This document shows positions 43,722-50,855 of a stretch of DNA of 64,000 bases, piece after piece. A model generated the notes under the pieces. It was not told the origin of the DNA and searched no databases. It saw only the letters and a list, made by a program, of their open reading frames with translations. The stretch lies in sequence record NC_021529.2; one strand, written 5' to 3'. The position numbers and the translations under genes were made by a program. Every line of letters begins with the position of its first letter. Within the stretch, counting starts at the first letter, position 1.

Positions 43722-44777
43722 TTATGGTCTGTAGATCATATGATCAGAGCCCATACGTTCCCAATCACCACTGTTCATGCGTCTTTTCATTTCATCGAAT
43801 AACGCAGGGTTAGCTCGAATATCGTTTAATGGTAGAGCAACAACACCTTCTGTTTTGTGAGCTAGTAACTCAAGTTTATCAAGCAGATCGCTTGATGTTC
43901 TACCGTCGTACTTGAATTCACTAAACCAATAACCAATCTTACTGAACTTACGATCTCTGGTGTATTTCACATCGAACCCTTTCAATGCATACAGCAAGCT
44001 ACTTTCTTTGCCATGAAACGGCTTTTTGTATTCGCTGTGTTCAGCACCAGCACGAGCAAGTAATCGTTTCTTAGCCTCTTCTGGTATATTGAACCAACCA
44101 TCGAAATTATTCTTAAATCGATTCATCCATGCTTCAGCAGTTGCAGGCGAGCCTTTAAACTGAGATTTCGTATCAGCAATTGCTTGTGCATATCGTGCGT
44201 TAATCTCATGAGAATAGTTCTGATATTCGTCGTGAGACGCTTTGTGACCGGCTTTAGCGTGTTTGACGAACTCTTTATCGATATAAGCTCTATTACGCCC
44301 TGAGTGTTGATACACGCCGTCTTCGTCGCGTGTCTCGAAGTCTTCTATATCACCAGAACGCCAGTTATCGTATGCATGTTGCAGTTCGTGCAATGCAGTA
44401 CTGTACATTTGTTCTTTCTTGACTCTGAACTTTGCCATAATCTGACTAACAGCAGTTACACCAGTGATGTCAACGGTGATTTGCAAGTTACCTGCTTCAC
44501 CAGCGTCTGGGTCGTGTAAAGCACCACGCCAAACACCCATTTCAGTTGGTGATTGATTGTCGAGCTTCAGATACGCGACGATACCACGTTCTAGCAATGC
44601 ATCGAATTTGCTTTCACCAGTTTTGATGTTCAGACTCTTGGTATTGATTGCAAGATTGTTCGGATCGAATGGTCTTGTTGATAATGCATATTCCAACTGT
44701 GTTTCAAGTCGGTCAACGATAAACTTTGCTGCGTACTCTAATGCACGCTGAGATTGAACGCTTTCAAAAATAATCAT
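43722..44777 (-). CDS. Zincin-like metallopeptidase, putative late/virion protein
   Basis: TALHELQHAYD (HExxH) and downstream HEINARY; ACTAAATA on minus strand at 44810-44817. Confidence 0.75.
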   Translation of the reverse strand: MIIFESVQSQRALEYAAKFIVDRLETQLEYALSTRPFDPNNLAINTKSLNIKTGESKFDALLERGIVAYLKLDNQSPTEMGVWRGALHDPDAGEAGNLQITVDITGVTAVSQIMAKFRVKKEQMYSTALHELQHAYDNWRSGDIEDFETRDEDGVYQHSGRNRAYIDKEFVKHAKAGHKASHDEYQNYSHEINARYAQAIADTKSQFKGSPATAEAWMNRFKNNFDGWFNIPEEAKKRLLARAGAEHSEYKKPFHGKESSLLYALKGFDVKYTRDRKFSKIGYWFSEFKYDGRTSSDLLDKLELLAHKTEGVVALPLNDIRANPALFDEMKRRMNSGDWERMGSDHMIYRP

Positions 44778-46498: not shown

Positions 46499-46773
46499 GC
46501 TTTGAAACAAAAATAATCTGCTATGCAGCACCAGTAACTGAATATGAACCGGGTTGGTCGCGTCCAGACGGTTACATTATCGCGAAAACCAAAGAAGACT
46601 TGCTTGCAAAAGGCGAAGCAATGCGCCAATACGCACAAACTGCAAAGTATGGGTATGAGCTGATCGGTGAATGTTTTATCTTCGAACCGACTCAGAAAGC
46701 AATTGACGAACTTTCAAATCGCGATTACGTGTGGACTTATAACAATTTCAGCGAATACGGCAAAGTAATTTAA
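46495..46773 (+). CDS. Hypothetical protein
   Basis: ATGA overlap. Confidence 0.65.
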   Translation: MSFETKIICYAAPVTEYEPGWSRPDGYIIAKTKEDLLAKGEAMRQYAQTAKYGYELIGECFIFEPTQKAIDELSNRDYVWTYNNFSEYGKVI

Positions 46774-46886
46774 AAACTTGTTTAATATCAGTAACATGAT
46801 GTTATACTAGCTCCACATGCAGAGAGTTGCATGACACGTCTGATTAAGTTGTACAGATAATAACAATCAAAAACAAAAGGTATAAA

Positions 46887-48242
46887 ATGAAGAAAGCTTT
46901 ACTTGCATTAGCATTAGTATGTTCTACGTCAGCGTCAGCATTTGATGGACTACCGACTAGTGGTGTAGAAACACCAAGTCCATTATCAACTGAATTCGCA
47001 TTCCCATATTTGACGAACGGTTATCACAACTCAGTTCTTCGTACATGGGTTAACACTGCCATGAAAGAAGCAGATGCAGAATTCCAAAAGACTGGTGAAA
47101 TCTCTCAAGTCGTCAACGAGAACTACATTTCGATGAACAGTTCTGGTTACAAATACTGGAATGATTCAGATGACAGAGCAACGACATCACCAGCAGCAGA
47201 TATGAAAGCGTTAAGCAATCTTGCAATGGCGCCACTGAAATGGGCTTGTACTGTATCAGGCGGCTGTTACGACAACGGCTACGAATACACACTTCGAATG
47301 AATGCTGATTCAAGCAACTTCGATGTAAACGGAACTTTGCATGTTGGGTGGGCAAACTTGCGTCGTGAAAGTTGTGCTCTTGCATACGGTGGTGTTCGAG
47401 TATGTACAACCATCGATGACATGAACTACGGTGGCGATCTAGCAGGCTTCTGGATCAAAGCAATTGATTGGATTAACGAGAAAGAAAATCTTTCAAACAT
47501 TCAAACATCGATTGATCAAGTGAAGAAAACATTTGACCGTCCGTATGTTACAGTGAACGCTACTCTAATCCCTGGTAAAGTATCTGGTGGTGATATTTCA
47601 TACTTCCATATGGCTGATCCAGAATGGTGGACTCTGTGGCAACGTCAAGTTAACTTGAACTCAGTTGCAATCGGGTACAAGCTAGGTCAAATTGAGCCGA
47701 TTCTAGCAGGCGACCATGCGGGTCTAAGACAGTCATATCTTCCGCAGGATGAGCAATGGGCTGGAAAATACGGTTCTCATCTAGCAGGTGCTTTACCGCT
47801 ATACGAATACAACCCATTGCGTGCGCTTGAAATCGTACACAGACAACGAATGCAGCTACCGTTAGGTGACTATGCACAATTCGACAACAACTATAAAGCG
47901 TGTCGAGTGAATCTGATGATGACTGGCGATGATGGTTACTTGCCGTCACCTGGGTATTACGGCGTAACAGCACTTTACGGTATAGCACCTCAATATACAC
48001 CAGTGCTTCAGCTAGCCACGTTCGCATGGTCAGCTAACACGAAGTCGCAGTCGAAGATGTACGAAATGGCAAACTATGATCACAACGCACGTGTGTTCCT
48101 ACACGAGCTAGGCCATAACTACGACTACGGTCACGATACAACACCGTCGGCAGACTCATACTGGAATGACCTGAGCGTAACAGTTCCATCATTCATCGAT
48201 GACCGTCGCAGCGACGATCAGTGCGTAAACCGCGTACTTTAA
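46887..48242 (+). CDS. Secreted protein with C-terminal HExxH metallopeptidase motif
   Basis: Sec signal MKKALLALALVCSTSASA; VFLHELGHNYDYGH; own promoter (46780-46808) and terminator (about 48250-48270). Confidence 0.75.
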   Translation: MKKALLALALVCSTSASAFDGLPTSGVETPSPLSTEFAFPYLTNGYHNSVLRTWVNTAMKEADAEFQKTGEISQVVNENYISMNSSGYKYWNDSDDRATTSPAADMKALSNLAMAPLKWACTVSGGCYDNGYEYTLRMNADSSNFDVNGTLHVGWANLRRESCALAYGGVRVCTTIDDMNYGGDLAGFWIKAIDWINEKENLSNIQTSIDQVKKTFDRPYVTVNATLIPGKVSGGDISYFHMADPEWWTLWQRQVNLNSVAIGYKLGQIEPILAGDHAGLRQSYLPQDEQWAGKYGSHLAGALPLYEYNPLRALEIVHRQRMQLPLGDYAQFDNNYKACRVNLMMTGDDGYLPSPGYYGVTALYGIAPQYTPVLQLATFAWSANTKSQSKMYEMANYDHNARVFLHELGHNYDYGHDTTPSADSYWNDLSVTVPSFIDDRRSDDQCVNRVL

Positions 48243-48289
48243 TAAACTAAGTGGCTACTTCGGTAGCCACTCTCTAAGAGGAATATATC

Positions 48290-48523
48290 ATGGCAATACT
48301 AGCACTAGTTTCATTCTTAATCGGCGTGACATTTATGGTAAATCTTCGAATTCCATTGATGTTGCGTGCTTCAAACCCAAAAGAAATGCTGAAGAAGGCA
48401 ACGCGACTTGAGCAACTTGCGTTTATCGCTGGTATCGTAGGCGTGCTTGTGTACTACATTCTGTTTTTCGTTTTCGTTGCGTGGGGCAAACTCAGCAATT
48501 CAAAGTGGAATAATAAGGAGTAG
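48290..48523 (+). CDS. Hypothetical membrane protein
   Basis: Two TM-like segments. Confidence 0.6.
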   Translation: MAILALVSFLIGVTFMVNLRIPLMLRASNPKEMLKKATRLEQLAFIAGIVGVLVYYILFFVFVAWGKLSNSKWNNKE

Positions 48524-50828: not shown

Positions 50829-50830
50829 TA

Positions 50831-50855
50831 AAAGGTAGCTTCGGCTACCTTTTTT
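50831..50855 (+). terminator. Intrinsic terminator
   Basis: AAAGGTAGC-TTCG-GCTACCTTT plus T run. Confidence 0.85.

What the first reader, a model, noticed from the sequence alone, without database searches (positions are those of the whole stretch)
46780..48270. Self-contained moron encoding a secreted HExxH protein
Seen: its own promoter (46780-46808), a roughly 75-nt leader, a Sec signal peptide, 451 aa, HELGHxxxxxH near the C-terminus, and a terminator with a TTCG loop. Inference: an exported metallopeptidase is unusual for a lytic phage. It may cut a receptor or periplasmic protein (superinfection exclusion) or act on biofilm or host tissue, and it may have been acquired from a bacterium.
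Basis: partly seen in the sequence, partly recalled or inferred. Interest (0 to 1): 0.65.

Follow-up and report, generated by a model that had tools for sequence, protein, structure and literature searches.

The report
Exported zinc-protease-like cassette in phage nt-1
Vibrio phage nt-1 carries an inserted promoter-gene-hairpin cassette for an exported protein with a zinc-protease motif that has no relatives outside a dozen sister phages; it is under strong selection yet dispensable in the lab, and what it cuts is unknown.

Summary
The window is Vibrio phage nt-1, a KVP40-type T4-like phage. The finding is ORF375 (VPFG_00156), annotated "hypothetical".

**Confirmed**
- The 451-aa ORF at 46887-48242.
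- A promoter of an enriched GTTTAA-N17-TAnnnT class, with a TG extended -10.
- A leader of about 72 nt.
- A Sec-type signal peptide, the only hydrophobic stretch, with no lipobox.
- HELGHNYDYGHD at residues 406-417.

**Corrected**
- The TTCG hairpin is real and covaries, but has no U-tract and runs straight into the next gene's ribosome site. It is not a canonical terminator.

**Cassette behaviour**
- KVP40 and QD01 have an empty site where the flanking genes overlap.
- nt-1/CZ01 and the ValKK3 group share the same left junction.
- phi-ST2 and PVA23 carry a fresh 1.3-kb internal deletion.

**The protein**
- It is an orphan. A profile search of 1.84 billion representatives found only the phage copies, so nothing supports a bacterial origin.
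- Only the motif region matches metzincin families: Reprolysin_5 scores 29 bits against a cut-off of 27.
- There is no Met-turn.
- AlphaFold failed, so the fold is untested.
- dN/dS of 0.03-0.06 shows the protein is functional.

My reading is an early-made, periplasm-exported, disulfide-bonded zinc endopeptidase of a new metzincin-like family. The substrate is unknown.

The parts
46780..46808 (+). Early-type sigma-70 promoter: -35 GTTTAA (46780-46785), 17-nt spacer, TG extended -10 (46800-46801), -10 TATACT (46803-46808), with an A-rich tract just upstream
   Evidence: It belongs to a motif class with 17 copies against 4.9 expected. The class is intergenic and upstream of ORFs. It is nearly invariant in ValKK3 and unique as a full sequence. 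No transcript data exist.
46815..46886 (+). About 72-nt 5' leader (start inferred). It has a 7-bp hairpin at 46816-46833, a conserved block at 46835-46860 and a Shine-Dalgarno AAGG at 46877-46880.
   Evidence: Both lineages keep a 7-bp 5' hairpin made of different sequence, but the z-scores are weak. The block CACGTCTGRTTARGTTGTACAGATAA is 24/26 identical between lineages whose synonymous sites are saturated. No Rfam family matches.
46887..48242 (+). CDS of 451 aa (nt-1 ORF375, VPFG_00156): the precursor of an exported zinc-peptidase-like protein
   Evidence: PHROG 18844, function unknown. dN/dS is 0.03-0.06 among ValKK3-type copies.
46887..46940 (+). Signal peptide coding region (residues 1-18, MKK-ALLALALV-CSTSASA, predicted cut before FDG)
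   Evidence: The sequence shows it directly. It is the only hydrophobic stretch. It is conserved in the sister copy and retained in the 42-aa remnant P0003.
48102..48137 (+). Zinc-binding motif HELGHNYDYGHD (residues 406-417): H406, H410 and H416 as inferred ligands, E407 as the inferred general base
   Evidence: Reprolysin_5 scores 29 bits (cut-off 27) on residues 378-422. The sister copy hits Reprolysin_2/3/4/5, M66 and M10 at the same place. This is among the best conserved segments.
48250..48271 (+). 9-bp C(UUCG)G hairpin 8 nt after the stop codon; no U-tract follows
   Evidence: Centroid fold (the hairpin alone) -15.2 kcal/mol; the 60-nt stretch has an MFE of -15.8 and z -3.0. One compensatory pair across five phages. 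Not called as a + strand terminator.

Best explanation
This is an accessory gene cassette (promoter, long leader, gene, stabilising hairpin) that was inserted once between two overlapping early genes of a KVP40-type Vibrio phage. Two sub-lineages now carry it.

Inferred mechanism:
1. Host RNA polymerase transcribes it from an early-type promoter soon after infection.
2. The 451-aa precursor is exported by Sec and its 18-residue signal peptide is removed.
3. The 48.5-kDa acidic mature protein folds in the periplasm, with its six conserved cysteines probably forming three disulfides.
4. A small C-terminal metzincin-like centre binds zinc through H406, H410 and H416, with E407 as the catalytic base.
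5. The large, well conserved N-terminal part (about residues 19-270), of unknown fold, most likely selects the substrate.

I take it to be an active endopeptidase that cuts a protein of the host cell envelope during infection. This would be a competitive or environmental function rather than one needed for growth. The most likely form is removing or altering a surface or periplasmic protein so that later phages, or the phage's own progeny, do not waste themselves on the infected cell.

Shown: the ORF, the motif, the signal-like N-terminus, the cassette indel, purifying selection, and dispensability.
Inferred: transcription timing, export, zinc binding, catalysis and the substrate.
For: Cassette:
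- KVP40 and QD01 have an empty site with flanking genes overlapping at ATGA.
- nt-1 and ValKK3 share the same left junction.
- The gene is in 12 phage records, whereas the neighbouring ORF371 is in 48.

Promoter: it belongs to an enriched class and is conserved.

Export:
- The N-terminus has the n, h and c regions with an AxA site and is the only hydrophobic stretch.
- Six Cys are invariant in the mature part.

Peptidase:
- HExxHxxxxxH(D/N/S) is conserved.
- Pfam Reprolysin_5 is over its cut-off.
- Every other weak Pfam hit is a metzincin family, at the same residues.
- For residues 300-451, most of the nearest named Atlas feature rows are zinc peptidases; metzincin models (M10, EcxA-type) and an M78 zinc-peptidase model are among the nearest to the Atlas model, beside clusters with no family. 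These are leads only.

Functional constraint: 66 synonymous against 8 non-synonymous changes between ValKK3 and phi-Grn1, w = 0.03.

Accessory role:
- phi-ST2 and PVA23 lost the gene by an internal deletion.
- phi-ST2 has the same host range and latency as the gene-bearing phi-Grn1 (PMC4780772).
Against: - No fold evidence. Both AlphaFold runs failed, Foldseek on them is meaningless, and PDB sequence searches are blank.
- The Pfam match covers only 53 of 196 profile positions, and the sister copy falls below the cut-off (23.8 against 27).
- There is no methionine anywhere after the third His, so no Met-turn.
- nt-1 has Asp where metzincins have the turn Gly.
- The signal peptide was judged by hand only.
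- No RNA data were listed.
- Nothing identifies a substrate, and the superinfection idea has no direct support.
- phi-ST2, which lacks the gene, had the larger burst (97 against 44). The phages differ elsewhere too.
Confidence: 0.55

Rival explanations
1. It is the same exported zinc peptidase, but its working place is outside the cell. Export serves oxidative folding, or hand-over to the type II secretion system. The enzyme then acts after secretion or lysis on extracellular material: biofilm matrix proteins, mucus, or receptor-bearing debris and vesicles that would trap progeny.
For: Six conserved Cys fit a protein built for an oxidising or extracellular milieu. The gene makes no difference to host range or latency in pure culture, as expected for an environmental function. 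The motif resembles those of secreted metzincins.
Against: An early promoter suggests action during infection rather than after lysis. No secretion signal beyond Sec can be read from the sequence. No homology to any known mucinase or matrix protease extends beyond the motif; M66 aligns over 18 residues and falls below its cut-off.
Confidence: 0.2
2. It is an exported protein that keeps a relic HExxH motif but is not a protease. It could be a binding or blocking protein of the envelope, or a pseudo-peptidase.
For: The Met-turn is missing. The turn Gly is Asp in nt-1 and CZ01. Only 35 residues follow the third His. Most of the conserved sequence lies in the N-terminal part, which has no recognisable family.
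Against: All three His and the Glu are invariant, and the motif segment is among the best conserved (73-80% against 40-47% in the neighbouring region). That is hard to explain if the centre were unused.
Confidence: 0.13
3. This is the first reader's origin story: a gene recently captured from a bacterial genome.
For: Overall GC is slightly high, 45.1% against 41.4 +/- 2.2% for the window's ORFs. Reprolysin-like families are common in bacteria.
Against: No bacterial or any other non-phage relative turned up in the word search or in the exhaustive profile search of 1.84 billion representatives. GC3 (40.5% against 38.4 +/- 5.2%) and codon usage are within the phage's range. The two phage lineages have already diverged to 62-64% identity with saturated synonymous sites, so any capture would be ancient.
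Confidence: 0.05
4. The N-terminus is not a cleaved signal peptide. The protein is either cytoplasmic or anchored in the inner membrane by an uncleaved N-terminal helix.
For: No signal-peptide predictor could be run. The h-region is short.
Against: A 9-10 residue hydrophobic core followed by a polar c-region with small residues at -3 and -1 is the Sec/SPase I pattern and is too short for a stable anchor. The pattern is kept in the sister lineage despite sequence change. An even number of invariant Cys lies in the mature part.
Confidence: 0.07

Closest known systems
Reprolysin/adamalysin-like metzincins (MEROPS M12B; Pfam Reprolysin_5 PF13688 and its bacterial relatives Reprolysin_2/3/4)
   Same: It has the extended zinc motif HExGHNxxxxHD, including the Asn after the second His and the Asp after the third. 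The 28 residues before the motif also align. The nt-1 protein scores just over Pfam's gathering score. It is a Cys-rich exported protein.
   Different: Only 53 of 196 profile positions match. There is no Met-turn methionine. Asp replaces the turn Gly in nt-1. Only 35 residues follow the third His. About 380 residues of unrecognisable sequence precede the centre. No detectable homologues exist outside 12 phage genomes.
StcE/TagA mucinases (MEROPS M66; Pfam PF10462)
   Same: The motif is worded alike (HE-x-GHNY-G-x-GH in the ValKK3-type copy). Both are Sec-exported proteins of enteric or Vibrio settings. There is a weak Pfam hit on the motif.
   Different: The hit covers 18 residues at 14.1 bits, against a cut-off of 20.6. 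Nothing else aligns. The resemblance to the StcE wording comes partly from my memory and is a lead, not a test.
Envelope-directed accessory genes of lytic phages (T4 imm and sp, T5 llp); from general knowledge
   Same: These are small modules that place a phage protein in the host envelope and change it to the phage's advantage; imm and sp act early in infection. They are dispensable for growth in single infection.
   Different: Those proteins block DNA entry, the lysozyme or the receptor by binding. None is a protease, and there is no sequence similarity. A proteolytic version would be a different mechanism.
PeSL-bounded cassettes of T4-like hyperplastic regions (Arbiol 2010; Comeau 2014, PMC4122927, the nt-1 genome paper)
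   Same: It lies in a hyperplastic early region of nt-1, carries its own early-type promoter and a stem-loop, and behaves as an indel between close relatives.
   Different: A PeSL is a stem-loop placed just upstream of the promoter. Here the promoter has no stem-loop before it, and the hairpin is followed by a ribosome site rather than a promoter. The hairpin also lacks the A3-4G3...C3T3-4 form reported for nt-1.

Membership tests
Metzincin clan (reprolysin-like, M12B / PF13688) | HExxH with a third His six residues after the second (HExxHxxGxxH) | tested here: met
   HELGHNYDYGH at residues 406-416 in nt-1 and CZ01; HEIGHNYGYGH in ValKK3-type copies.
Metzincin clan (reprolysin-like, M12B / PF13688) | Gly at motif position 8, which allows the turn after the active-site helix | tested here: inconclusive
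   It is Asp in nt-1 and CZ01 and Gly in the ValKK3 group. A Gly two residues later is invariant.
Metzincin clan (reprolysin-like, M12B / PF13688) | Met-turn: a conserved methionine downstream of the third His | tested here: not met
   There is no Met in the 35-36 residues after the third His in either lineage. A conserved D-x-Y-W lies 7-10 residues after it.
Metzincin clan (reprolysin-like, M12B / PF13688) | Family HMM score over the curated cut-off across the domain | tested here: inconclusive
   nt-1 scores 29.0 against 27 bits but covers only profile positions 111-163 of 196. The sister copy scores 23.8 bits. The six-frame hit in VH7D scores 20.5 bits.
Zincin fold in general | Motif on an active-site helix packed against a mixed beta-sheet, with a lower subdomain | tested here: inconclusive
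   AlphaFold2 gave pLDDT 35 for the whole protein and 32 for residues 219-451. Foldseek hits on these models are noise. The Atlas's own low-confidence model of residues 308-440 lies nearest to, among others, M10, EcxA-type and M78 models at TM 0.41-0.51, beside unnamed clusters, which is a lead only.
Gluzincins (thermolysin-like) | A conserved Glu as third zinc ligand downstream of HExxH | tested here: not met
   nt-1 has no Glu at all after the motif, and the Glu residues of the sister copy are not conserved.
M66 (StcE/TagA) | PF10462 over its cut-off | tested here: not met
   There is no hit for nt-1. The sister copy scores 14.1 against 20.6 bits over 18 residues.
Sec signal peptide cleaved by signal peptidase I | Basic n-region, hydrophobic h-region of 7-15 residues, polar c-region with small residues at -3 and -1 | tested here: met
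   MKK / ALLALALV / CSTSASA, then F. This was a manual reading plus a hydropathy scan. SignalP was not available.
Bacterial lipoprotein (signal peptidase II) | Lipobox with Gly, Ala or Ser at -1 to the Cys | tested here: not met
   The residues before the Cys are A-L-V in nt-1 and A-L-L in the sister copy.
Moron-type autonomous cassette | Present or absent as a unit between conserved neighbours | tested here: met
   In KVP40 and QD01 the ORF374 and ORF376 homologues overlap with nothing between them. nt-1 and ValKK3 share the insertion junction.
Moron-type autonomous cassette | Own promoter and own terminator | tested here: inconclusive
   A promoter-like site of an enriched, conserved class is present. 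The downstream hairpin has no U-tract, so read-through is likely. No transcript data exist.
PeSL element (Comeau 2014) | A stem-loop immediately upstream of an early promoter | tested here: not met
   No stem-loop lies between the ORF374 stop (46773) and the promoter. The hairpin at 48250-48271 is followed by a ribosome site, not a promoter.

The most novel reading that the evidence does not exclude
ORF375 founds a new zincin family: a metzincin-type zinc site without a Met-turn, fused behind a large novel recognition domain. T4-like vibriophages export it early to cut a host envelope protein from within, for example their own outer-membrane receptor. That would be superinfection exclusion, or protection of progeny, by proteolysis. 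To my knowledge this mechanism has not been described for lytic phages.
Probability: 0.15. Interest if true: 0.7.

Novelty: new variant of a known kind. Interest (0 to 1): 0.45.

Why it matters
Large lytic phages carry many orphan early genes whose roles are unknown. Here one can be given a testable biochemical reading, an exported zinc peptidase. It comes with natural controls: sister phages with an empty site, and two with a fresh deletion.

If the enzyme is active and its substrate is an envelope protein, it would show a proteolytic way for a lytic phage to remodel its host's surface. It would also add a peptidase family with an unusual zinc-site architecture.

The hosts, V. natriegens and V. 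alginolyticus, are easy to handle, and the relatives are used in aquaculture phage therapy. Knowing what an exported protease does would therefore also matter for choosing therapy phages.

If it proves inactive, or has a trivial function, the finding is an ordinary hyperplastic-region orphan.

Tried and rejected
**Structure**
- AlphaFold2 on the whole protein and on residues 219-451, each with a two-sequence alignment, gave pLDDT 35 and 32, which is unusable.
- Foldseek against the PDB with both models gave only noise. VIA-align was not tried, because it leaves out long stretches with pLDDT under 60, and most of the whole-protein model and all of the C-terminal one are below that.

**Sequence searches**
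- PDB sequence searches with the protein and with the profile found nothing relevant.
- The word search on the whole protein and on residues 340-451, the exhaustive profile search and an IMG/VR scan found only the known phage copies and the 42-aa remnant. The alignment could therefore not be deepened.
- NCBIfam, PADLOC and Rfam returned nothing meaningful.
- Pfam on the N-terminal 200 residues and the middle 150 residues found nothing.

**Profile-profile comparison**
- No whole genome is held for the window.
- The control-genome hits of the genome search came without loci. I could not build family alignments for an hhalign test and left that out.

**Expression**
- No RNA sequencing run was listed.

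**Ideas rejected**
- Lipoprotein: there is no lipobox.
- Gluzincin: no conserved downstream Glu.
- M66 membership: below the cut-off, motif only.
- PeSL-bounded module: the geometry is wrong.
- Kinship with the neighbouring HExxH gene ORF369: only LHELxHxYD is shared.
- Recent bacterial origin: no homologues, and the codon usage is phage-like.

**Not run**
Full report
**Identity of the window**

The stretch 46700-48400 is 100% identical to Vibrio phage nt-1 (NC_021529.2, 230211-231911). nt-1 is a 247.5-kb KVP40-type T4-like phage of Vibrio natriegens, genus Mylasvirus. The finding is ORF375 (VPFG_00156), annotated "hypothetical protein". It lies in a long run of small + strand early-region genes of unknown function. 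The nt-1 genome paper describes such regions as hyperplastic and does not discuss this gene (PMC4122927).

**Checking the observation**

- *ORF.* It runs 46887-48242 and encodes 451 aa.
- *Promoter.* The site at 46780-46808 reads GTTTAA, 17 nt, TG-n-TATACT. The generic TTGACA/TATAAT scan does not list it.
  - The pattern GTTTAW-N16-18-TAnnnT occurs 17 times in the window against 4.9 expected, and none of 100 shuffles reached that count.
  - Nine of the + strand copies are intergenic, and eight of them sit 48-107 nt before the next ORF of 50 aa or more.
  - The promoter is almost invariant in ValKK3-type phages, although synonymous sites in the gene are saturated.
- *Leader.* With a start inferred near 46815 the leader is about 72 nt, roughly twice that of the other promoters of the class.
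- *N-terminus.* MKK / ALLALALV / CSTSASA followed by FDG has the three regions of a Sec signal peptide with Ala at -3 and -1. It is the only hydrophobic segment of the protein. It has no lipobox.
- *Motif.* HELGHNYDYGHD lies at residues 406-417.
- *Hairpin.* The hairpin at 48250-48271 is a 9-bp C(UUCG)G stem-loop of about -15 kcal/mol. It keeps its pairing through a compensatory change in the sister lineage. It is followed by CTCTCTAAGAGG and the next gene's ATG, not by a U-tract, and the scan calls it only on the minus strand. It is therefore better read as an intercistronic stabilising hairpin, of the kind known from T4 mRNAs (general knowledge), than as a terminator.
- *Upstream.* No terminator lies between the ORF374 stop and the promoter, so the cassette is not sealed transcriptionally.

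**Is it a cassette?**

Yes, by comparison.

- tblastn finds the gene in only 12 phage records: nt-1 (two records), CZ01, and the ValKK3 group of ValKK3, VH7D, R10Z, R11Z, Va3, XZ1 and phi-Grn1.
- The neighbouring ORF371 is found in 48 KVP40-type records.
- In KVP40 and QD01 the homologues of ORF374 and ORF376 overlap directly (ACTATGA), with nothing between them.
- nt-1 and ValKK3 diverge from that empty site at the same nucleotide, inside the last codons of ORF374. Both continue with AATTTAA, an A-run and the promoter.
- A shared junction points to one insertion event. The tight gene overlap at the empty sites makes the empty state the likelier ancestor.
- The patchy distribution is then best explained by later exchange between phages or by repeated loss. 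Judged by ORF371 and ORF373 identity, nt-1 is closer to QD01, which lacks the cassette, and ValKK3 shares a genus with KVP40, which also lacks it. I did not build a tree, so this step is inference.
- The geometry is not that of a PeSL as defined by Comeau et al..

**Decay in sister phages**

- phi-ST2 and PVA23 keep the promoter, the leader and the first codons of the gene (through the signal peptide) at over 99% identity to ValKK3.
- They then jump to the 3' end of the gene and the hairpin.
- Comparison with ValKK3 places the deletion between two CTTT tetranucleotides.
- phi-ST2 retains a 42-codon ORF, P0003. PVA23 also has a frameshift in the A-run after the ATG.
- The gene is therefore dispensable. 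phi-ST2 (deleted) and phi-Grn1 (intact) were isolated on the same host. They show the same host range on 25 strains, the same 30-min latency and similar plaques, with bursts of 97 and 44 (PMC4780772). The two phages differ elsewhere, so this says only that the gene is not needed for lytic growth in the laboratory.

**Selection**

| Pair | Synonymous / non-synonymous changes | dS | dN/dS |
|---|---|---|---|
| ValKK3 vs phi-Grn1 | 66 / 8 | 0.27 | 0.03 |
| ValKK3 vs VH7D | 44 / 11 | 0.17 | 0.06 |
| VH7D vs phi-Grn1 | 108 / 19 | 0.50 | 0.04 |
| nt-1 vs CZ01 | about 11 / 9 | 0.04 | 0.24 |

Where it is kept, the protein is under strong purifying selection.

- The best conserved segments between the two lineages are residues 31-75, 121-165 and 391-420, the last holding the motif.
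- Residues 271-345 are the least conserved.
- Three of the six nt-1/CZ01 differences fall at residues 288-294.

**What the protein is**

- PHROG 18844 (function unknown) matches it end to end.
- Pfam gives one hit over threshold: Reprolysin_5 at 29.0 bits (cut-off 27), E 1.5e-6. It covers only residues 378-422, which are profile positions 111-163 of 196.
- The ValKK3-type copy (P0002, 62% identical) gives sub-threshold hits to Reprolysin_5, _3, _2 and _4, Peptidase_M66 and Peptidase_M10. All are metzincin families and all hit the same residues.
- The wording HE-[LI]-GHN-Y-[DG]-Y-GH-[DNS] is close to the reprolysin consensus.
- Against membership:
  - no methionine follows the third His in either lineage, so the defining Met-turn is absent;
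  - the turn Gly is Asp in nt-1;
  - only 35 residues follow the motif;
  - there is no conserved downstream Glu, so it is not a gluzincin.
- Nothing is recognisable in the first 380 residues.
- The mature protein is about 48.5 kDa with pI 4.9 and has six invariant Cys at 121, 127, 163, 173, 339 and 446. This fits an oxidising compartment.

**Relatives**

There are none beyond the phage copies.

- The word search found only P0002.
- A region search on residues 340-451 found only the query itself.
- The exhaustive profile search of 1.84 billion representatives found only the query's own cluster and the phi-ST2 remnant.
- IMG/VR held only the VH7D record.
- Composition gives no sign of recent import: GC3 is 40.5% against 38.4 +/- 5.2%, and codon usage is inside the phage's range.

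**Fold**

I could not test this.

- With only two effective sequences, AlphaFold2 gave pLDDT 35 and 32.
- Foldseek on those models returned noise.
- In the ESM Atlas, most of the named nearest feature rows for residues 300-451 are zinc peptidases (M85, M35, M26, Tox-MPTase3).
- The Atlas's own low-confidence model of residues 308-440 has M10, EcxA-type and M78 models among its nearest, beside clusters with no family, at TM 0.41-0.51.
- By the tool's own calibration these are leads, not evidence.

**Reading**

Putting this together, I read ORF375 as the precursor of an early-made, Sec-exported, disulfide-bonded zinc endopeptidase. It would belong to a new, very narrow metzincin-like family, carried on an inserted accessory cassette.

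I put about 0.75 on a real zinc-peptidase centre and about 0.85 on export. Together with the cassette reading, that gives 0.55 for the whole statement.

The site of action and the substrate are open.

- I lean towards an envelope target during infection, because of the early promoter and because Sec delivers only to the periplasm.
- Action outside the cell after secretion or lysis is a serious rival (0.2).
- A non-catalytic exported protein cannot be excluded (0.13).

**Other observations**

- The neighbouring HExxH gene ORF369 (43722-44777, minus strand), noted earlier by this scan (s1-161589), is unrelated apart from LHELxHxYD.
- The leader holds a 26-nt block at 46835-46860 that is 24/26 identical between the two lineages. 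It is unique in the window and matches no Rfam family.
- Both lineages also have a 7-bp hairpin at the inferred 5' end, built from different sequence. The folding z-scores are weak.

**Novelty and score**

No paper I could search mentions this gene.

It is a new variant of a known kind: a zincin-type peptidase candidate with an atypical zinc-site context, a novel N-terminal part and an unusual setting as an exported early gene of a lytic T4-like phage.

It is moderately interesting and directly testable, with natural deletion and empty-site controls. The function is not shown and the fold is unverified, so I score interest at 0.45.

Noticed in passing
L004:4620-4885 (phi-ST2) and L005:4620-4900 (PVA23): Decayed copies of the cassette. 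Promoter, leader and the first codons (through the signal peptide) are intact, at over 99% identity to ValKK3. A deletion of about 1.3 kb between two CTTT tetranucleotides then joins them to the hairpin. phi-ST2 keeps a 42-codon ORF, and PVA23 has an extra frameshift in the A-run after the ATG.
   Followed up: yes
window 46835-46860: A leader block, CACGTCTGATTAAGTTGTACAGATAA, is 24/26 identical between nt-1 and ValKK3 although synonymous sites in the gene are saturated. It is unique in the window and matches no Rfam family. It could form a 5-bp stem (GTCTG/CAGAT) with a conserved 11-nt loop, which suggests a possible translational operator.
   Followed up: partly
window 8041, 11255, 17422, 21653, 46780, 51921, 53586, 54346, 55799 (+ strand): A promoter-like class, GTTTAA-N17-TA(t/a)aaT, is enriched about 3.5-fold over shuffles. 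Most copies are intergenic, 48-73 nt before an ORF start. It resembles the T4 early -35 GTTTAC rather than the TTGYVH consensus given for nt-1 PeSLs in PMC4122927.
   Followed up: partly
window 50830-50853: A second TTCG-loop hairpin, AAAAGGTAGC-TTCG-GCTACCTTTT, has a T-run after it. Unlike the one behind ORF375 it is a canonical terminator, and it is of the A-G...C-T form described for nt-1 PeSL stem-loops.
   Followed up: no
window 43722-44777 (- strand): A second HExxH protein, ORF369 (351 aa), lies 2 kb upstream on the opposite strand. It shares only LHELxHxYD with ORF375 (BLASTP E 0.18), so the two are not paralogues.
   Followed up: partly
window 48290-48523; L003:4620-4853; L010:2080-2328: ORF376 is a 77-aa protein with two hydrophobic stretches. 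In QD01 and KVP40 its homologue overlaps the ORF374 homologue directly. ValKK3-type phages lack ORF376-378 altogether, so the right flank of the cassette differs between the two carrier lineages.
   Followed up: partly
window 47748-47768 (residues 288-294): Three of the six amino-acid differences between nt-1 and CZ01 (D288S, Q290T, K294T) cluster in the least conserved part of the protein, which is also where the two lineages differ by indels. It may be a surface loop under different pressure.
   Followed up: no
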